Shown: positions 12,780 through 61,610 of the stretch, in pieces
Layout: each line of letters opens with the position of its first letter
Position numbering within the stretch: position 1 is the first letter of the stretch
DNA from: Octopus sinensis
Taxonomy: Eukaryota
NCBI RefSeq assembly: GCF_006345805.1
Contig: NC_042998.1
Location: forward strand, 80,910,001 to 80,974,000
Length of the DNA: 64,000 bases
Direction: 5' to 3'
Position numbers and translations under genes: made by a program
The notes under the pieces: generated by a model
What the model saw: the letters and a program-made list of their open reading frames with translations, nothing else
Told to the model about the DNA's origin: nothing
Database searches by the model: none

Positions 12780-15700
12780 TTCCATCACGGACATTCCAAT
12801 TATGCAAAAATAATACCTTTCATTTTCAATTCCCTGTCCCTACTCCTAATTTTTACATTTTCACTTCTTTCAAAATAATTCCATACTCCTTCCCTAATGC
12901 AGGCGCCGAGCAATCTTTTACATTTCTTCAGGCAATTTCTTACATTTTCAATTCTTTTCAATTTCTTACATTAAGAATAGGGGAATAGGGTACTTGATAC
13001 CGAGCGAAAACACTCCCACTTCTTTCAGTTTTCCTTACTGAAATGCGTGCCATTGCACACATTAAAATTTCACGAGGCTGTTTTATCTTCTTCCTTAATG
13101 TGGACCTGCAGACCTACCAACTTACCTTTAACCATTCCTACACTCACATGCAGCATCAACGGCAGCTTCTGCCCCACGAGCACCACTAAATAAAGCTAAG
13201 CAATTCATCCAATTGCTCTTTCATTAAACTTTCCCTATCCGATCTATACGACAAAGCAGCCATACATTGACAAACAACACCCAAAATTCATGTCCACACA
13301 AACGACAACATCCGCAGCGCAATTCATAACCACTTTCTCATTTGCTCTTACCATTTCTCTTGCCTTGCCTTTCACATCTGTTTCCATTTTCATTTTCATG
13401 TCATAACACTAATATCATCTAATTTTACACATTTACCGTTATATTACCGCAGCAGTTGCAAGTTTGCAACTTATCTACAGTTACATACTAACCCTTCAAT
13501 TAATATTCCATACTTAACAGTGTATCTCACTGCATTTCATCATGCTTAATTTAGATCTGCAAGATCATCAGTAAGGAGAGCCAATGAATCGTCGGTCGAA
13601 ACTGACATTAGACGATCACAAAATGCTAAACGTACAGTCACTTCAAGAGCACTCCAAACAGATCACCAGCGTACACTTCGACGAACTGCAGATGCTGCTT
13701 CAACTGCTGCTGCACGAGCTGCAGAGACTGAACACCACTATCGGATGGGACGGTACGTAAGTAGCAACTAGGCTTTCTGGCGCATCTTTGGCTTTCCACT
13801 TCACCAACGACACCCCGCCATTCAGCAGCTTGCAGTGCACCTGGAAAACGGTCAAAGTGTGTACTTCACCGATGCTAATGCTTCTCTATTGGCAGAGGAA
13901 CCAAGGGATAGCTCACTGCATTCTTCAAGTTTTGTCAAGTGAATCCATTCGCTCAAACCTTACTGTATCTTCAGATTCCATTGTACTACACTTCAAATGG
14001 AAAAAAATGGGCCCCATGGAAAGCAGGTGACAATGTTCATGGATACTCTGGCATTAAGTTTTACACTTGCTTTGGGCGAGTATACACAGTGCATCCCACT
14101 CAACAAGAGTGCTTCTACCTCCGTCCACTACAGCATGAGGTCAGAGGGACAACGTGTTTTCAGGCATTAAAAACCGTTCATGGACATCTCTGCACAACAT
14201 ACAGAGAAACCTGCTATCGACAAGATCTGTTAGAAGATGGTGTACAATGGGATGCAACTTTGGGAGAGGCTGCTTTATCAGAATCACCTAAAAGTCTCAG
14301 GGCACTATTTGCAGTTTTACTACAGACATGCGAACTGTGTGATCCTGCCACTCTATGGCTCAAATACAGAGACAAACCTGGCTGAAGACTTTCAGCGGCA
14401 AGCTCAACTGCTCTATCCTGACATGGAGGGTATTAGCAATGAAGTCTACAACAAAACTATCATTGACACTGAAGACTGAAGAGCTACACTGGGTGGAAAT
14501 GAATTGTCCACGTATGACCTGCCACAAACATTAAGGTCAGGGTCAAATAGCCTTCCCACTGCTGTCATTCGTGAAACATCCTACGACACTCAAGCGGTTT
14601 CAAAGTACATTGTTGAAAATGAGCCTAAATTACTTCCGGACCAGCTGCAGGCCTACAGAACTATTCTTAACAGTGTACGCCAACGCGAGGGACGAATCTT
14701 CTTTCTCGATGCTCCTGGAGGGACAGGAAAAACATTTATTACAAAGCTTCTCCTTGCAGAAGTTAGGCAGCATCAGGGCATTGCAGTAACTGTAGCCTCC
14801 TCTGGCATTGCAGCTACTTTGTTACACGGTGGCAGGACAGCACACTCGACTTTTAAACTCTCTCTCAATTTAGCAGCATCCGAGATGCCTTCATGCAACA
14901 TCAACAAAAGCTCAGATCAGGGGCACGTACTTAAAAGGTGTCATCTAATTGTTTGGGATGAGTGCACCATGGTTCACAAGGGAGCTTTGGAAGCATTAGA
15001 TAGAGCCCTGAAAGACATCCGAGACTGTTATCTCCAATGGGAGGTGTAACGCTTCAGTTGTCAGGGGATTTTAAGCAAACTCTTCCTGTCATTCCGAAAG
15101 GCACTAGAGCAGATGAGGTCCAAGCATATCTAAAGTCCTCTACCCTGTGGCATCATGTTACGATCCTCAGTCTTACTACTAACATGAAAGCTCAGCTACA
15201 AGGCGACCAAATGTCCACAAAGTTTGCACAAGTCATTTTGACACTTGGTGATGGCAAGGTGCCTCTCGACGCTGCAGGACAAATGGAAATGTGGCCGAGC
15301 TCAAACACAAAGTTTTTTCCCAACTTCACAGAAAACTACCAAAATCACAATTGGCTGTGCGAAAAAGCAATATTAGCTCCAAAAAACGTCGCTGTTAAAA
15401 AAATTAATGAACGGCTAATGCATTCTCTTCCCGGCACTATTCACACTTACAAGTCTGTTGATACAATTCCAGATAAAAATGAAGTGGTGAACTATCCTCC
15501 TGAATTTCTCAATTCGTTGGAGCCTCCTCGACTATCTCCCCACATATTAGCACTTAAATTTGGAACTCTTGTAATGCTACTTCGCAATCTGGAACCACCA
15601 CGACTTTGCAATGGAACACGACTGGTGATAAAGAAAATGATGTCACACGTTATCGAGGCGATCATTCTTTCTGGATGTGGGAAAGGCGATGACGTCTTTA

Positions 15701-16068
15701 TTCCAAGAATTCCTCTAACTCCATCAGGAGCAGAAATTCCATTTACATTCAGAAGACTGCAATTCCCCCCTCGTATCAGCTTTGCCATGCCCCTTAACAA
15801 ATCTCAGGGTCAAACCCTCTCTGTAGCTGGTCTTCTCTTGGAAGAGCCCTGCTTCTCGCATGGACAACTGTATGTTGGAGCTCAAGAATGGGAAGCAAAA
15901 GAAACCCCTTTGCATATGCTCCACAAGGAAAAACAAGGAACATTGTTTACAACGAAGTGTTATAATCACAGCAGCCAGGAGGTATGTACATGATCACCTT
16001 TTTGACCAAATTGATGTACTTTCATGTATTTATATTGATATACATACATACATAGATACATACATAGA

Positions 16069-24122: not shown

Positions 24123-24168
<46 letters not shown>

Positions 24169-24239
24169 AATTGAGATAGGGGTTGTAAATGCAACCCTCC
24201 ATGGGATAACATATATCCAATATACTGCTAGTGAAGTAC

Positions 24240-25500
24240 CCACCAAAATTAATACATAAATGTTAATGATTGCGATGCAATTAATTCATTTACTGTATTA
24301 TATGGGCAAAGGTAAAATGATTTACCACAAATTACTAATACAAGATAAGTAAATGGAGAAATACATCTAAATCAAATATCAGTTACCAGATAATACTCAA
24401 TCACATACTTTATTAAACCACCACATAAGAGACTGTAGGGTTAAATATAAAAAGCAGAACAAATCAGTGTACATAAAGGAATGTACATAAAAAATTGTAC
24501 ATAAACGAGTAATGTTGTATAATAAGTAGAATATATATAAAAGAGAATATAAATATAAGTAAATATAAATATAAGTATAGATTACATCTTACAGCTGTTT
24601 CGGCCATGTAGATAAGTATGTCTCATTTTACCAATATTAGCCCTTTATGGTTGGTCAATATATAGATATAAATGAGACATTTACAAAAATATCATAAGGC
24701 CTCTTCGGAGATTATGTAATATAAATCAGTCTACATATATACGCACATGGGTGTGGGTGCATACCCATAATACAACATATATATATACATATGAGTGCAT
24801 ATACTCACACTCCTATACATATAAAAATATACATATACATAATTATATAAATAAATAATATAAATTAGTAAACATATATATGTGTTCCACATTCAATGTC
24901 TCAGTTTTTCGACTTAATATTGTGATAATAAACATACACAAATTAGTACCTAGATGCAAATATACATAGTCAATCGTACATTATATTACTTCATAATAAT
25001 TTCTAAAGTGTCTTTAAAGTTAGCATTATTATCGTTGTCAATACCATTAATGTTACCATTATTATTATTCATAATATTATTAATAACGCTTACATTAGGA
25101 TCCAGAACGGTATATATATGTCCGGGTTCAAGTTAGTAATTTTCCTTATGACATAAATACACTATTGGATTTGAATTTAAAATTATCATTATCTTCCTCA
25201 CGGCTGGTCAATTGAGAGCCGCCCGACCCCCACCACACCGCATAAGCAAAACATACACATCCACATCTAACCCTAAACCCACACATCCACACAGAAACTC
25301 ACACACACATGCACACACACATGAATACACCTCGACACATCTCCACACATTCAATAAATTACAGAGTGCATGTCTGTCATCGCATGGCTTATAGATAAAT
25401 CAGTACAGACAGCAGTGTTTAACACTAGCACACACACTCACACGCACATCCGCATATACGCATAAATATTAATACACTTTCCTATACTGTGTCAGGGAAC
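24240..25500 (-). mobile_element. Penelope-like element terminal region
   Basis: Contains a hammerhead motif and an Asn-rich decayed reading frame on the minus strand. Boundaries are approximate. Confidence 0.45.
24581..24720 (-). ncRNA. Type-I hammerhead ribozyme motif with extended stem II
   Basis: ATTAC[ATA]ATCT-CCGAAGA-GGCC...GGCC-GAAAC-AGCT-GTA/AGATGTAAT. An 11-bp inverted repeat (24618-24628 / 24670-24680) lies inside stem II. Confidence 0.75.
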
Positions 25501-25613
25501 TTACGCACACACATATATAGATATTTAAATATATATCTGCGCACTCATACGTACAAATAAAACATATATATATATATATATACATATATACATACATATA
25601 TATATATATATAT

Positions 25614-25661
<48 letters not shown>

Positions 25662-27012
25662 TCTATATATATAAAACTCTAGTTGTGTGAGTGTCTGTCC
25701 CCTTCGATTTAGATTCCTAACTCCTCCCACATTTTGCGGTGCAGTTTAACCAAATTCGGGTATCAAGAAGACAAACAAAATCTGACACGTTGAGGGGAAG
25801 ACAACAGACTATTTTTGTTGAAGATTGCCTTGTTATGTTGTAACCCCGTTATTATTTTCACAGTATTCGTTAAATAATGTCTGGGGAAGATCGCAAGAAG
25901 CTCGATATGACTCCAGAGGAGATGAAACGGTTCGGGGAGGCGATGAAAAAGGAAGAATTCAGAAAATTACTCGCAGAGTATGCCGAAGAAATATCAAATC
26001 CTGAAAACCGCAAAAAATATGAAGAAGAGATTACACAACTAGAAAATGAAAGAGGTATGGATATAAAATTCATTACTCCTGAACCCGGCCATGTTATAAA
26101 ATCACTTATTAATAACAAGAAAAAGGCTTTTATAAATATCTGCAAAAATGAAAACATTGGGAAGCCAACATTTACTAAAGAGAATGGCCCTGACCGTTTT
26201 GGAATCAACTGGGCAATCCCCCATTCTTTAGCTAGACCTCGCGAAGACTTCGATCTCAAAGGTGAAAAATGCTTTGTGTATGATGTCGTGTTTCACCCGG
26301 ACACTTACCGAATGGCACAGTCTAACTCTAAGTTTAAAAAGCTTGTACACGATACAGCGATAGAAGCCATTGAGGAACATTTTAATGTCACATTGGATAA
26401 AAAGATAAGTACACCCAAAGTGAAAAACAATTTCAAAGGAGTTAGAACCCCTACTGTGGTTCGAACCCGGCGAGAAGATGGATCGACCAAAACCGCAGAC
26501 GACTCTGACAGCATTTTGAACAGTATGCCTTATCCATATGACCCTAATAAGACAACCAAAGAATTAACTGAGGAATGGGTGGAAAAAAGGTAAAACACGC
26601 TCGTCCAAGAGACTAGTCGTGATTCATATCGAGCCCGTCTGACTATTAGCGCGCGTCAACGATGAGTCTACGATTTAAAAAATAATTTAACATAATTTTT
26701 TATTCCATTTTAATGCATAAAATGCATCGTGTGTCGATGGCGGCGGAGTTGGCGTCCACGCTCACAGCTGCACCTGTTTGCTTCTCCCCCTTCCCTCCCT
26801 CGTGAAGCTGTGGGGAAGGGAGTGTAAAGAAATCAACGTCGTAATGCGTTGTGAAGGAAACCAGCGTTCTTTTAGAACAACGACTTCATGGCTTGAAGAC
26901 ACCAAAACAAAAATGGCTAAGAAAGCCCGAATTTATAAGGGAAGTAACTCTCTAAAAATGCTTATATAGTTATTTCCCTTACAACCCCGAGCAACGCCGG
27001 GCGATACTGCTA

Positions 27013-27013
<1 letters not shown>
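25662..27013 (+). mobile_element. Non-autonomous Helitron carrying an 850-bp insert (25765-26614)
   Basis: A|TC 5' end at 25662. Hairpin CCCGAGCAACGCCGGG followed by CTAG|T at 27010-27013. Both flanks are collinear with the uninterrupted copy at 50855-51370. Confidence 0.92.
25877..26593 (+). CDS. DNAAF2: N-terminal (PIH1) fragment of Kintoun / dynein axonemal assembly factor 2, 238 aa, truncated
   Basis: EEFRKLLAEYAEEISNPENRKKYEEEITQLENERG, FITPEPGHVIK, AFINIC, W-IPHSL, VYDVVFHPD, TAIEAIEEHF and FKG match the Kintoun/PF13 N-terminus as I recall it from vertebrate DNAAF2. No internal stops. The CS and C-terminal parts are absent from the window's ORFs. Confidence 0.92.
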   Translation: MSGEDRKKLDMTPEEMKRFGEAMKKEEFRKLLAEYAEEISNPENRKKYEEEITQLENERGMDIKFITPEPGHVIKSLINNKKKAFINICKNENIGKPTFTKENGPDRFGINWAIPHSLARPREDFDLKGEKCFVYDVVFHPDTYRMAQSNSKFKKLVHDTAIEAIEEHFNVTLDKKISTPKVKNNFKGVRTPTVVRTRREDGSTKTADDSDSILNSMPYPYDPNKTTKELTEEWVEKR

Positions 27014-30414: not shown

Positions 30415-31228
30415 TACATATTGTCGGCCTTCGGATCACCTGGTTCAGCCGTCTCTGGATTTCATCCAACAGGTGGTCAGTTGGTTTCAAATCCAGGTTG
30501 AGAGCCGGCCATGACATGGTTCCGATGTTGGGCTGACGTAGGATGTCCTTCGTGACCCTCGCCGTGTGGGAGGGAGCATTGTCCCGCTCGAACACGTGGC
30601 GCGAAAAAAGGCATGCTAGGAGGTCTTAGGATCTGGTCAACGTAAGCTGCACTGTGAAGCCATTCCCTCTGCCTGCACCCATATTTTGGAACACATGGTA
30701 CTCTATTCTCTGATTCAGGCCTGTTGCTTTGGCCACCCCACGCATCTCTCCATGACACATGCGTCTTTATAGCGTTCACCCCTCCTACGCCACATCCTCA
30801 CTCTGCCATCCGAGTTGGAAACGCCGTAGCGGTTCTTGTCAGAGAAGACTATTGACCACCATTTTTCATACCGCCAATGTTGGTTCTGTGTAGCCCACTG
30901 TAGTCGTGCCTGATAGTGACGGACGGTGAGGATAAGCCCTCGACCAGGACGACTACAGCGCAGGTTGTTGGCAGCCAGTCGACATCATATCGTGTCGTCA
31001 CTTACGGGTCGCTGTCCAGTGCTAGTGATTTCGCGAGCTGTCACACTGGCTGGTCTGAAGCGATCACGGAAGTGTTGCAGGTGGATGAAGGGGTCCTGCT
31101 TGGGTGTGGCCATCCGGGGGCGCCTTTTGTGGGCACGGTCTGCAGTGCTGTTGATGCTGTTGTGTCGCTCTTGCAGGCGATAAATGGTGCTGACATGGAC
31201 ATTGTAATTTTTTGCAAGCACGCTGCCC
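30415..31228 (-). mobile_element. Decayed Tc1 (DD34E-type) transposase
   Basis: HTH region VSTIYRLQERH...RPRMATPKQD, FERDNAPSHTARVT and WPALNLDLKPTDHLLDEIQRRL. Confidence 0.85.
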
Positions 31229-32961
31229 TGGACTGAGCACTACCTCGAACTGTATGCTACACAGAATGTCGTCACAGACTCGGCCCTCAACGCTATCCCA
31301 GTCCTACCGGTTATGAATGAACTAGACTCTCCACCCACACTGGAAGAGCTCAGCAAGGCAATCGACACATTAGCCTGTGGCAAGGCTCCCGGGAACGATG
31401 GCAACCCATCAGAAATCCTCAAATGTGGGAAACCTGCACTGCTACACTCCCTGCATGATTTACTCTGCCTCTGCTGGGAACATGGTCATATACCGCAAGA
31501 CATGAGAGACGCTAAAATCGTCACCCTGTACAAAAACAAAGGTGATCGCAGCGACTGCAACAACTACAGGGGTATCTCTCTACTCAGTGTAGTCGGTAAA
31601 GCCTGCGCACGAGTCACACTAGCGCGTCTACAAACATTGGCATACCGTGTTTACTCGGAGTCACGGTGTGGTTTCAGAGCAGGACGATCCACAGTGGACA
31701 TGATATTCTCACTACGACAACTGCACGAGAAGTGCCTAGAACAATAGATGCCTCTCTATATAGCCTTCATTGACCTCACCAAGGCATTTGATCTCGTCAG
31801 CAGGAATGGACTCTTTACACTTCTACAAAAGATAGGATGCCCACTGCACCTGCTCAAAGTGATAACCTCATTCCACGACAACATGCACAGCACTGTCTGC
31901 TACAACGGCACAACATCGGAAGCCTTCCCAGTCAACAGCGGAGTGATACAAGGTTGTGCTCTCGCACCAACACTCTTCGGAATATTCTTCTCGCTGCTCC
32001 TACAGTTTGCTTTTAAGACCAGCAAGGAGGGAGTCTACATCCACACCAGGTGCGACGGCAAGCTTTTCAACATCGCCCGTCTACGAGCCAAAACCAAAGT
32101 GGCTAAGGTACTCATTCGAGAGATGCTCTTCGCAGATGACGCAGCACTGACGTCACACACAGAAGCTGGGCTCCAAGAATTTGTGAGCTGTATGTCCCAT
32201 GGTGCAGTGCGCAGAGCATAACCCATCAATCTGCATAGATGGCTACAACCTAGCAGTGGTCGACAACTTCACTTATCTCGCGTCCACTATATCCAACTCT
32301 GTGTCCATCAACACAGAGGTTACGAGCAGAATCGGTAAGGCAACAGTGGTAATGGCCAAGCTTAACAAACGGGTATGGAACAACACCAGTCTTACTCAGA
32401 ATACTAAACTGAGAATTTACCGAGCATGCGTACTGAGCATACTGTTGTACGGAAGCGAGACACCTAAGGTGCCTGCGGCGCATTCTCCATATCAAATGGC
32501 AGGACAGGATCACTAATACAGAGGTTTTGGACCGTGACAACATGTACAGCATGCAAACATCACTCTGCGAGAGGCGTCTTCGGTGGCTAGGTCATGTCAG
32601 CCGAATGGATGCAGGACGGATTCCAAAGGACCTACTGTACGGACAGCTAGCGGAAGGCTCCAGAACAATGGGGCGCCCTAAACTGCGCTTCAAGGATATC
32701 TGCAAGAAGGACCTAAAGCTATGCCAGATCAACACCCAAACGTGGGAATCCGCCGCTGCCAACAGAAGCGCCTGGCGACACAGTGTCAAGCACGGTGCCA
32801 TGACTAAAGAGAACCAGGCGAAAGAAGCAGCAGCAGCAACCACAGCTCGCATCCCTTTTCACTTGTACCAGATGTGGTAGAGACTGCCACTCGATGATTG
32901 GTCTGCACAGCCACACCAGGAAGTGCAGATAAACCCACCACCTTTTCCGAGCTACACCATC
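31229..32961 (+). mobile_element. 5'-truncated RTE (BovB-like) LINE, RT domain with stops and small deletions
   Basis: KAPGNDG, YKNKGDRSDCNNYRGISLLS, CGFRAGRSTVDMIFSLRQL, AFIDLTKAFDLVSR, GVIQGCALAPTLF, LFADDAAL and RRLRWLGHVSRM. Confidence 0.95.
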
Positions 32962-50854: not shown

Positions 50855-51370
50855 CTAGCAGTATCGCCCGGCGTTGCTCGGGTTTGTAAGGGAAATAACT
50901 ATATAAGCATTTTTAGAGAGTTACATCCCTTATAGATGCCAATTCGGGCTTTCTTAGCCATTTCTGTTTTGGTGTCTTGAAGCCATGAAGTCGTTGTTCT
51001 AAAAGAACGCTGGTCTCCTTGACAACGCTTTACGACGTTGATTTCCTTACACTCCCTTCCCCACAGCTTCACGAGGGAGGGAAGAAGAGGGAGAAGCAAA
51101 CAGGTGCAGGTGTGACCATGGACGCCAACTCCGCCGTCATCGACACACGAAAAATTATGCATTAAAATGGAATAAAAAAATGATGTTAAATTATTTTTAA
51201 AATCGTAGACTCATCGTAGACGCGCGCTAATAGCCAGACGGGCTCGATATGAATCACGACTGTAAGATACCCGAATTTGGTTAAACTGCACCGCAAAATA
51301 TAGGAGTAGTTAGGAATCTAAATCGAAGGGGACAGACACTCACACAACTACAGTTTTATATATATATAGA
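50855..51370 (-). mobile_element. Uninterrupted 516-bp non-autonomous Helitron (same family as 25662-27013)
   Basis: On the minus strand, A|TC at 51370 and hairpin plus CTAG|T at 50855, inserted in TA-rich DNA. Confidence 0.92.
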
Positions 51371-51449: not shown

Positions 51450-51453
<4 letters not shown>

Positions 51454-52646
51454 CTTGAACACCTTGACCGACCAGTCCGTCGGGCGTCCATTTGACACTG
51501 CTGGTCACAGCACGCTGTCCTCTCCTCTCTGGATCGCGCCTTTCTCATCCACGTGATCCCAATCGTCCTCCTGAAATCGTAACTCCACCGTTGTGGAGGC
51601 CTTCCGAGTGGTCGTTTCCGCTTGCGTGGGTACCACTCAACAACTGCGCGGGACCACCGATTATCGGTGAGCCGGGTTACGTGTCCAGCGCATCTATAAA
51701 TGCTACGGGTGTATTCTGCGATGACATCCCTCTTCCCATCGATGACGACCCTCGCCCTCACCAGACGATGATCGCTGTCGGTGTTGAATGGCGTCACGAC
51801 GGAGACGTCATGTAATATGCGTCGCTTATCAACCAGTATGTAGTCGATCTCGCTTCGGTGCTTAGAGTTCGGCGATATCCAGGTCCATCTCTTCCTCTCC
51901 CTCTTCCTGAATAGGCTGTTTCCGATGTAGAGCCGCCTCGCCTCTGCAATGGTAACCAAACATTCTCCTCTCTCGTTTCTCTCTCCTATGCCAAATCTCC
52001 CGACGTACTCCTCCCTTTGTCGTCCATGTCCTACCTTTGCGTTGAAGTCTCCAATCACGACAGTGTAAGTGGACTTCATAGCCAACCCTTTGTCTAGTTG
52101 TCGATAGAATTCTTCCACCTCGTCATCGTCGCTGGAACTTGTGGGAGCATAGGTCTGGACAATCTTGAGGGTGGTCTTCCCTGAGAGGTTCACATTCAAT
52201 ACACCAATCCGTGATGATATGAACTGGCAAGAAGCGACCCCCGAAGCCCATTCCATACTTACGATGAAGCTGATACCTCCGACCGATCTAGTACCTTCTG
52301 CTCTCCCTAATCTCACAGCGCATCCATCTTGCCATCGTATACTCGCTTCCTTCTTCCAGCGTGTCTCGCACAGCCCTAACACGTCGCAACTGATCAACTT
52401 CCTCTCCTCCATTAGGTGGTTCAGTTCTCGCCACCCTGCCAAGGACCTGCAGTTGTAGGTGCATATGGCAAGGTTAGTCCTGTTCCATGACGGCCCACGG
52501 GAACCTGTGATTCTTAGCAGCCTCTCGTCGCTCGGGTTGCACTCCGCCGTCATAGAGTGGCCCGATTGACGTGCAGGGTACTGAGGCCCTTTTCCTTTTC
52601 TCTTCGTTCTTCGTGCTGTTTTAGCCATACGATGACGCCATCCCAC
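51450..52646 (-). CDS. RTE LINE ORF with apurinic-like endonuclease fused in frame to the post-RT C-terminus (RT missing), 398 aa
   Basis: YNCRSL, LCETR, YAPT, GDFNAKVG, IDYILV and SDHRLV are followed directly by DVIAEY...AGHVTRLTDNRW...RPLGRPPQRW. Confidence 0.9.
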
Positions 52647-52823
52647 TGGCTGGGCGGGCAGGCTGGCATTTTGATGGATGGCCGTTGCCTGTTCAGGAGT
52701 TTATCTGATTTTTCATCCCAGAGCGAACCTGGTGGAGTTGTCAGTTTAGTCGCCGACGACCCCACCATGCAACAGGTTGTACTGGATTACATGTTACCAG
52801 TAGCACTCTAGAGCGACCTGACA
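51450..52823 (-). mobile_element. Internally deleted RTE element flanked by (TA)n on both sides
   Basis: ~180-nt leader, the ORF above and a TCAAGGTG repeated tail. TA runs at 51417-51450 and 52824-52850. Confidence 0.85.
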
Positions 52824-61030: not shown

Positions 61031-61146
61031 CTAGCAGTATAACCCGGCTTTGCCCGGGATTAAGTTAGGATTATTAAGCTAATCAAGTTCTTTATTTCAA
61101 ACCAAACTAACATTGACGTCAAATTTGGGCGAAATCTATTGAAATT

Positions 61147-61181
<35 letters not shown>

Positions 61182-61610
61182 GCAACACACACACACATAC
61201 ATACACACACGTACGTACGTACACCTATTGCAATTATGATTTTTGTACGCATACATGTTCGTGTGTGTGTGTGTGCGTGTTTCCCGTATATCAACAAAAC
61301 ACTCGATGGAAAAAACAACAAAAGTCTTAACAAAATGTTATTCGTCGCTAGACGGGGACATAACTCCTGTTTGCAAACAATGGTGATTTCTCCGACTTGA
61401 AAATTGTTTTGGTTGAAAATTTATTTTTACTGCTATTCGCGGGAGCCTCTGGTAAAAATAAGTTGACGAAAATACAACTAGGATCATGACGAATGTCCTC
61501 CTAAAATTGGAGCGCCATGCGTGCTAATTTGTGGACGTGCATAAATTACATTCACGTACACACACGCACACATACATACACACAGAGATCCTGCCTTTTA
61601 TATATACAGA
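61031..61610 (-). mobile_element. 580-bp non-autonomous Helitron (second family)
   Basis: On the minus strand, A|TCTGTATATATAAAAGGCAG at 61610 and hairpin CCCGGGCAAAGCCGGG plus CTAG|T at 61031. Confidence 0.8.

What the first reader, a model, noticed from the sequence alone, without database searches (positions are those of the whole stretch)
25662..27013. A ciliary gene fragment (Kintoun/DNAAF2 PIH1 domain) sits inside a non-autonomous Helitron
Seen in sequence: the uninterrupted Helitron at 50855-51370 reads ...CCAAATTCGGGTATC-TTAC-AGTCGTGATTCATATCGAGCC.... At 25764 the same element stops after GGGTATC and resumes with AGTCGTGATTC at 26615. So 850 bp of foreign DNA replaces about 4 bp, with no target-site duplication and no poly-A. 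Both Helitron termini (A|TC, and hairpin plus CTAG|T) are intact. The insert holds 112 bp of upstream sequence and a stop-free 238-codon ORF that keeps the Kintoun motifs I can recall. Established: Helitrons capture host gene fragments, and DNAAF2 is a dynein pre-assembly co-chaperone needed for motile cilia and sperm flagella. Inference: this is a recent gene-capture event that made a potentially mobile PIH1-only paralog. It could encode a truncated competitor of DNAAF2 or produce regulatory RNA against the parent gene.
Basis: partly seen in the sequence, partly recalled or inferred. Interest (0 to 1): 0.92.

Follow-up and report, generated by a model that had tools for sequence, protein, structure and literature searches.

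The report
Kintoun gene fragment inside a young Helitron
A very recent, one-off copy of the first 850 bp of the cilia-assembly gene kintoun (DNAAF2) has been pasted into the middle of a small rolling-circle transposon; this is a clean example of a known process (Helitron gene-fragment capture), with no sign yet that it spreads or functions.

Summary
Window 25662-27013 is a ~505-bp non-autonomous Helitron. It has a 5' TC, a 3' hairpin plus CTAG, an A|T target and no target-site duplication, and the family has thousands of copies. It is interrupted by 850 bp that the intact copies lack.

The insert matches one other place in the 2.72-Gb genome, the 5' end of a full-length kintoun/DNAAF2 gene on contig C6 (PIH1 + PIH1_CS domains). 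It differs from that donor by two synonymous CpG-to-TpG/CpA changes and a 2-bp loss in an A8 run. That frameshift, not the native gene structure, ends the 238-codon PIH1-only ORF.

The junctions show loss of TTA, one filler base, a 3-bp TAG microhomology, no duplication and no poly-A. These are the marks of a templated "filler-DNA" insertion, one of the published models of Helitron capture.

The host copy and the insert are equally young (about 0.2% private change each). So it cannot be decided whether capture happened at transposition or afterwards.

The chimera is single-copy, so mobility is unproven. Two synonymous changes cannot test selection. Nothing supports the proposed competitor-protein or regulatory-RNA role.

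Verdict: real, recent, and a new member of a known kind. Interest is moderate to low.

The parts
25662..25764 (+). Helitron 5' arm (103 bp). It starts TCTATATATATAAAAC directly after a host A, inside a (TA)n tract.
   Evidence: Alignments to 28 and 12 other copies; terminal motif scan
25765..25765 (+). Single filler base (A), found in neither the Helitron consensus (T) nor the donor (T)
25766..26616 (+). Copied 5' fragment of the kintoun/DNAAF2 gene (851 bp, counting the shared TAG). The donor is G000:C6:109026395-109027247.
   Evidence: Only two genomic copies exist. Pairwise alignment shows 2 substitutions and a 2-bp indel.
25766..25876 (+). 111 bp of donor sequence upstream of the ATG. It is either 5' UTR or the end of an intron: it finishes with an acceptor-like TTATTATTTTCACAG 13 bp before the ATG.
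   Evidence: Direct reading. Whether it is UTR or intron was not resolved.
25877..26593 (+). ORF of 238 codons plus TAA. Residues 1-237 are identical to the parent protein.
25991..26473 (+). PIH1 N-terminal domain (residues 39-199)
   Evidence: Pfam PF08190, E 8e-57. The genome scan places it at the same coordinates. It is similar to solved PIH1D1 N-domains.
26035..26035 (+). Substitution: copy ACA, parent ACG (Thr53, synonymous). CpG in the parent became CpA in the copy.
26047..26047 (+). Substitution: copy AAT-G, parent AAC-G (Asn57, synonymous). CpG in the parent became TpG in the copy.
26583..26588 (+). A6 run where the parent has A8. The 2-bp loss shifts the frame and creates the TAA stop at 26591-26593.
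26614..26616 (+). TAG microhomology shared by the donor (GAGACTAG) and the acceptor (CTTATAG) at the 3' junction
26617..27013 (+). Helitron 3' arm. It carries one private substitution (26985 C, consensus A) and ends CTAG, followed by a host T and (TA)20.
   Evidence: 99% identity to at least 40 other copies; alignment
26986..27001 (+). Subterminal GC-rich hairpin CCCGAGCAACGCCGGG, 12 nt before the 3' end
   Evidence: DNA folds. The same position and stem occur in a second family. The energy alone is not significant against shuffled sequences.
50855..51370 (-). Uninterrupted copy of the same family (a different subfamily), used as the reference for the empty state
61031..61610 (-). A third Helitron-type element. 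It shares only the ~15-nt 5' end and ~30-nt 3' end (hairpin + ATACTGCTAG) with the other two. Its interior is unrelated.

Best explanation
A double-strand break or template switch inside one copy of a young, abundant non-autonomous Helitron was healed by copying about 850 bp from the 5' end of the kintoun/DNAAF2 gene on another chromosome. The copied stretch runs from 111 bp upstream of the ATG to codon ~244, all within the long first coding exon. It was rejoined through a 3-bp microhomology. This is the 'filler-DNA' route of Helitron sequence acquisition.

Shown:
- donor, acceptor and product sequences
- junction anatomy
- single-copy status of the chimera
- near-identity to the donor
- intact Helitron termini

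Inferred:
- The template was DNA.
- The event is well under a few million years old.
- The 2-bp homopolymer loss arose during or after copying, or is a sequencing error.
- The product is at present a neutral, decaying, unamplified fragment, not a working gene.
For: The insert is absent from copy B and from 12 subfamily copies whose sequence at the site is GGGTATC-TTA-TAG-TCGTG.

The whole-genome search finds only the window copy and C6:109026395-109027247. The C6 locus reads on in frame for 577 codons with PIH1 and PIH1_CS domains. Its best named relatives are mollusc 'protein kintoun'.

The product junctions are GGGTATC|A|AGAAGAC and GAGAC-TAG-TCGTG. That means TTA lost, 1 filler base, 3-bp microhomology, no TSD and no poly-A. 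The acceptor and donor flanks at the left junction match 8/10 (GGGTATCTTA vs TGGTACCTTA), a level reached by 2.6% of random window positions.

Both substitutions are CpG losses in the copy.

No exact (or, in the 10-kb stretch holding the gene, near-exact) copy of this family's end motifs lies within 10 kb upstream or 17 kb downstream of the donor fragment. This argues against read-through transduction.

The filler-DNA model predicts exactly such internal inserts with short junction homologies (PMC6544945).
Against: Templated insertions made by end joining are usually much shorter than 850 bp.

The left junction is not a clean product of priming from the 8/10 homology: the expected CTTAG reads CAAG. 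That homology is only weakly beyond chance.

No reads were available, so the junctions rest on one assembly.

The arms (1 private change in ~500 bp) and the insert (2 in 849 bp) are equally young. Capture during the transposition that created this copy is therefore as compatible with the data as later repair.
Confidence: 0.75

Rival explanations
1. The fragment was picked up during rolling-circle replication or transposition. The chimera was born as a new Helitron variant that inserted here, and it is a mobilisable PIH1-carrying element.
For: Both termini and the hairpin are intact. The subfamily is 99% homogeneous with thousands of candidates, so it was active very recently. RepHel reading frames up to 1846 codons without stops exist in the genome. 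The arms and the insert show the same tiny divergence.
Against: There is only one chimeric copy in 2.72 Gb. No source copy of the chimera exists elsewhere. The junctions need no transposase. No autonomous partner with the same ends has been shown.
Confidence: 0.25
2. The template was kintoun RNA or cDNA captured at a break (a templated-sequence insertion of the kind described in human genomes), not chromosomal DNA.
For: The fragment starts 111 bp before the ATG, a plausible 5' UTR length. It lies wholly within one exon, so it shows no intron that would exclude RNA. There is no poly-A or TSD, as in non-LINE templated insertions (my own knowledge).
Against: The leader ends in a strong acceptor-like tract (TTATTATTTTCACAG) 13 bp before the ATG. 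If that is a real splice site, the first ~98 bp are intronic and the template was DNA or pre-mRNA. The 8/10 flank similarity lies upstream of the copied part, so the template reached further 5'. Neither point is decisive.
Confidence: 0.15
3. The ORF is a functional PIH1-only paralog (a dominant-negative competitor of kintoun), or the locus is a source of regulatory small RNAs against the parent.
For: A complete PIH1 N-domain with ATG and stop, 237/238 residues identical to the parent. 111 bp of native upstream sequence was carried along.
Against: Two synonymous CpG decays give no power to detect selection. The stop arises from a frameshift. The sequence upstream of the fragment in the parent was not copied; it contains a CCAAT motif and what I recall as a half X-box-like GTTGCTAT. 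No expression data exist. The CS domain, which defines kintoun together with PIH1, is missing.
Confidence: 0.07
4. Assembly artefact: a chimeric read or a mis-join placed kintoun sequence inside a repeat.
For: The host is a high-copy repeat flanked by (TA)n. The A8-to-A6 difference is a typical long-read homopolymer error. No allelic contig is available as a check.
Against: Both flanks continue the same Helitron copy in register with only 3 bp missing. The junctions carry biological signatures (filler base, microhomology). Two transition differences from the donor are not typical assembly errors. There are no gaps in the window.
Confidence: 0.05

Closest known systems
Helitron gene-fragment capture (maize, Myotis bats, silkworm, fungi), in particular the filler-DNA model of internal acquisition
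   Same: A host gene fragment sits internally between intact 5'-TC and 3'-hairpin-CTAG ends of a non-autonomous Helitron. Short homologies occur at the junctions with an identifiable donor locus. There is no TSD and no poly-A (model as described in PMC6544945).
   Different: Published cases are normally recognised because the chimera has amplified. Here there is one copy only, about 99.7% identical to its donor. It is at most the first step. No chimeric transcript is known.
Templated insertions at double-strand breaks (filler DNA in end joining; human templated-sequence insertion polymorphisms)
   Same: A small deletion at the target, a non-templated base, microhomology, an ectopic template from another chromosome, and no TSD or poly-A.
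   Different: 850 bp is long for polymerase-theta-type filler. The target being a Helitron may be coincidence, since such repeats fill much of this genome. The human cases often derive from RNA, which is unresolved here. The comparison rests on my own knowledge, not on a tool result.
Kintoun / DNAAF2 (PIH1-family dynein pre-assembly co-chaperone)
   Same: The N-terminal 237 residues are identical to this genome's kintoun orthologue. The PIH1 N-domain is complete.
   Different: It lacks the PIH1_CS domain and everything downstream. It is a fragment, not a member with the family's full architecture.
LINE-mediated processed retrocopy
   Same: An intron-less copy of coding sequence at an ectopic site.
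   Different: It holds the 5' end of the gene, not the 3' end. It has no poly-A and no TSD, it includes sequence upstream of the ATG, and the target lost 3 bp.

Membership tests
Helitron (non-autonomous) | 5' end begins TC | tested here: met
   TCTATATATATAAAAC begins the element in copies with non-repetitive flanks
Helitron (non-autonomous) | 3' end is CTRR | tested here: met
   CTAG in 27 of 28 copies and in all 13
Helitron (non-autonomous) | Insertion between host A and T without target-site duplication | tested here: met
   A precedes the TC in all copies with unambiguous flanks. The base after CTAG is an invariant T. The flanks are unrelated between loci and show no duplication.
Helitron (non-autonomous) | GC-rich hairpin about 10-12 nt upstream of the 3' end | tested here: met
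   A 6-bp stem with one bulge ends 12 nt from the terminus. It is conserved in place in a second family with an unrelated interior. The fold energy itself is not distinguishable from shuffles (z -0.7 to -1.4).
Helitron (non-autonomous) | No terminal inverted repeats | tested here: met
   Only (TA)n self-complementarity was found at the ends
Helitron (non-autonomous) | An autonomous RepHel element with the same termini in the same genome | tested here: inconclusive
   At least 150 strong Helitron_like_N matches, with open frames up to 1846 codons, and a very large PIF1-helicase repeat family. The 10 Rep loci held lack the terminal motifs within 1.5 kb.
Amplified gene-carrying Helitron (completed capture) | The same chimera present at two or more loci | tested here: not met
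   The insert has exactly two genomic copies, the donor and this one
Amplified gene-carrying Helitron (completed capture) | Chimeric transcript or other expression | not testable with these tools
   No read data. The exact-product look-up found nothing.
Kintoun / DNAAF2 | PIH1 N-terminal domain | tested here: met
   PF08190, E 8e-57, profile positions 1-162 of 166
Kintoun / DNAAF2 | PIH1 CS-like domain following the N-domain | tested here: not met
   Absent from the 238-residue ORF. Present in the parent at residues 293-392.
Kintoun / DNAAF2 | Orthology of the donor gene to named kintoun proteins | tested here: met
   The best named hits at 40-44% identity over 97-100% of the query are 'protein kintoun' of gastropods, bivalves and a brachiopod. 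All carry PF08190 + PF18201.
LINE-mediated retrocopy | Poly-A tail, target-site duplication, 3'-anchored copy | tested here: not met
   None of the three is present

The most novel reading that the evidence does not exclude
This is a Helitron capture caught at step one. The chimeric element is still mobilisable by an active RepHel in this genome, and it is transcribed in ciliated or germline tissue. There it would yield a PIH1-only protein that titrates kintoun partners, or antisense/small RNAs that dampen the parent gene. That would make the birth of a transposon-borne regulator of ciliary dynein assembly directly observable.
Probability: 0.05. Interest if true: 0.65.

Novelty: new member of a known kind. 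Interest (0 to 1): 0.3.

Why it matters
Helitron gene capture is well documented, but its mechanism is still argued from old, amplified and diverged chimeras. Here the donor, the unbroken acceptor consensus and the product are all available at about 99.7% identity. The junctions can therefore be read base by base, and they favour templated repair (filler DNA) over read-through.

As a single unamplified event in a mollusc genome, it is a useful worked example and a possible presence/absence marker. It does not change what is known, and nothing yet links it to cilia biology.

Tried and rejected
1. Age test. I expected the Helitron arms to be much older than the insert, because they differ about 4-5% from copy B. 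That would have placed the insertion after transposition. The test failed. Copy A belongs to its own subfamily with at least 40 copies at 99% identity and has only one private change. The ages cannot be told apart.

2. Left-junction homology. I first counted 9/10. The script gives 8/10, and 2.6% of random window positions do as well. It is suggestive only.

3. Autonomous partner. A helicase-protein search returned places but no sequence. The ten Rep loci already held have no terminal motif. The helicase fragment in the window (14480-15990) has no detectable Rep domain in neighbouring frames and no family terminus near it.

4. Independent support for the copy. The exact-product look-up found no record. 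Records of this genome or close relatives appear to be withheld, and the best kintoun hit is only 60% identical.

5. Empty-site allele. A 5-kb query across the locus found no second full-length match, such as a haplotig.

6. Read-through or transduction from a Helitron next to the donor. No family terminus lies in the 27 kb around the donor fragment.

7. dN/dS. It is not meaningful with two substitutions, both synonymous CpG transitions.

8. Native-exon reading. Rejected, because the ORF is bounded by Helitron sequence on both sides and the full gene lies on C6.

Full report
**1. What is in the sequence**

Window 25662-27013 (+) and 50855-51370 (-) are two copies of one repeat. They align from the first base to the last, except that copy A carries 850 extra bases (25765-26614) where copy B has TTAC.

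The extra DNA holds 112 bp followed by an ATG-to-TAA frame of 238 codons (25877-26593). Residues 39-199 of that frame are a complete PIH1 N-terminal domain (PF08190, E 8e-57). They resemble the solved N-domain of PIH1D1.

No duplication of target bases and no A-tail flank the insert. The window has no assembly gaps.

**2. The carrier is a Helitron-type element**

A genome search with copy B gave more than 1000 first-look candidates. All 40 that were scored were full-length and 97-98% identical.

I aligned 28 copies with 80-bp flanks. Similarity starts at TCTATATATATAAAAC directly after a host A. It ends at ...CCCGAGCAACGCCGGGCGATACTGCTAG directly before a host T. The flanks are unrelated between loci and show no target duplication.

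A 6-bp GC stem with one bulge lies 12 nt from the 3' end. There are no terminal inverted repeats.

Some copies lie head to tail, or abut a related element.

A third element in the window (61031-61610, -) has an unrelated interior. It shares only the 15-nt 5' end and the 30-nt 3' end, including the hairpin and ATACTGCTAG. This is what one expects if only the ends are the cis-acting signals.

The genome also holds many Rep (Helitron_like_N) matches, some in open frames of 1700-1850 codons. It holds a very large family of PIF1-type helicase repeats, one fragment of which lies in this window.

I could not show that any RepHel element carries these particular ends. That one criterion stays open.

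Recently active Helitron families have been reported in a curated repeat annotation of Octopus vulgaris (PMC13282606). I suspect this genome is an octopus because of its size, its 30 chromosome-scale contigs and its mollusc best hits. That is an inference, not a tool result.

**3. The donor**

The 850 bp occur only twice in 2.72 Gb: here, and at C6:109026395-109027247.

At C6 the same ATG opens a frame of 577 codons that ends at a GT donor site. It contains PIH1 and PIH1_CS domains. Its relatives that carry names are 'protein kintoun' or 'dynein assembly factor 2' of molluscs and other lophotrochozoans, at 40-44% identity over the full length.

So a full-length parent exists, and the window copy is the derived fragment. 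The fragment lies wholly within the first coding exon plus 111 bp upstream of it.

A further, diverged kintoun-like gene lies on an unplaced contig (40% identity in the PIH1 domain). It is not involved.

**4. Differences from the donor**

There are two substitutions, at 26035 and 26047. Both are third-position and synonymous. In both, the parent has CpG and the copy has CpA or TpG. This fits decay in the copy.

There is one 2-bp loss in an A8 run (A6 at 26583-26588). It shifts the frame onto TAA. With A8, the frame would run across the junction into the Helitron and stop after 255 residues.

The '238-codon ORF' is thus an accident of truncation plus frameshift. The frameshift may come from error-prone copying, later slippage or a homopolymer sequencing error. 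I cannot tell which.

**5. The junctions**

Copy A's own subfamily reads GGGTATC-TTA-TAG-TCGTG at the site. It has at least 40 copies at 99% identity and 2517 first-look candidates.

The donor reads ...GGTACCTT|AGAAGAC......GAGAC-TAG|CTGAAG. The product reads GGGTATC-A-AGAAGAC......GAGAC-TAG-TCGTG.

So TTA was lost, one base (A) is untemplated, and TAG is shared by donor and acceptor.

Upstream of the left junction, acceptor and donor match 8/10 (GGGTATCTTA vs TGGTACCTTA). Resampling window positions reaches this in 2.6% of trials, so it is only a hint. The product is also not the clean outcome of priming from that homology.

A small deletion, a filler base, microhomology and an ectopic template are the signature of templated break repair. 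This is what the filler-DNA model of Helitron acquisition proposes, as opposed to end-bypass read-through, which places captured DNA at the 3' end (PMC6544945).

No family terminus lies within 10 kb upstream or 17 kb downstream of the donor fragment. This also argues against transduction.

**6. Timing**

I tried to date the insertion relative to the Helitron copy.

Against its own subfamily, copy A has one private change in about 500 bp (26985 C). The insert has two in 849 bp. Both are about 0.2%, so the order of events cannot be resolved.

The O. vulgaris paper equates a Jukes-Cantor distance of 0.09 with 25 My. With that calibration, 0.24% would be under about 1 My, with a Poisson range up to a few My. 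This assumes the calibration applies to this species.

**7. Function**

Nothing here bears on expression.

The copied upstream 111 bp may be 5' UTR, or may include the end of an intron, since an acceptor-like TTATTATTTTCACAG sits 13 bp before the ATG. The parent's sequence further upstream was not copied.

The fragment lacks the CS domain.

Two synonymous CpG decays cannot test selection.

The competitor-protein and regulatory-RNA ideas remain speculation, and I give them low probability.

**8. Verdict**

This is a real, very recent, single-copy templated insertion of the kintoun 5' end into a young non-autonomous Helitron. It is a new instance of a known phenomenon.

Its value is that donor, acceptor and product can all be read. 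The chimera has not amplified, and there is no evidence of function. An assembly artefact is unlikely but was not excluded with reads.

Noticed in passing
window 14480-15990 (+): Two adjacent open frames encode a PIF1-like helicase (PF05970, E 2e-39 and 7.5e-19) plus a Pif1 2B domain. They are split by a frame change. The protein has at least 9290 first-look matches in the genome at 62-88% identity. It looks like a decayed Helitron helicase. No Rep domain was found in neighbouring frames.
   Followed up: partly
window 61031-61610 (-): A second non-autonomous Helitron family. It has the same 5' (TCTGTATATATAAAA) and 3' (hairpin + TTATACTGCTAG) ends as the studied family but an unrelated interior, which includes (GT)n and (TA)n tracts.
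   Followed up: partly
window 24134-25638 (+): The 1.5 kb directly upstream of the chimeric Helitron is itself a high-copy repeat (dozens of scored copies at 91-97% identity). It ends in the (TA)n tract into which the Helitron inserted.
   Followed up: no
L010, L020, L028, L035, L047, L050 and G000:C9:12712035-12713057: Copies of the Helitron family often lie head to tail, or directly abut a related element (CTAG followed at once by TATATATATAAAAC or TCTTTATATATAAAAGTGAAG). Such tandem arrays are typical of rolling-circle elements.
   Followed up: partly
G000:C9497:150589-152019 (L038 1399-2829): A second, intron-less kintoun-like gene of 476 codons with PIH1 and PIH1_CS domains. It is 40% identical to the C6 gene in the PIH1 domain and lies on an unplaced 892-kb contig. 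It could be an old paralog, a retrogene or foreign DNA; this was not resolved.
   Followed up: partly
window 31208-31744 (+) and 51453-52700 (-): A reverse-transcriptase fragment (RVT_1, below Pfam's cut-off) and an endonuclease/exonuclease/phosphatase frame of 416 codons. These are LINE remnants. The second lies immediately beside Helitron copy B.
   Followed up: no
L004 2300-2395 (G000:C6, upstream of the donor fragment): Just upstream of the copied segment, the parent has CCAAT and a GTTGCTAT half-site. From memory, the half-site resembles an RFX X-box of ciliary gene promoters. Neither was carried into the Helitron.
   Followed up: no
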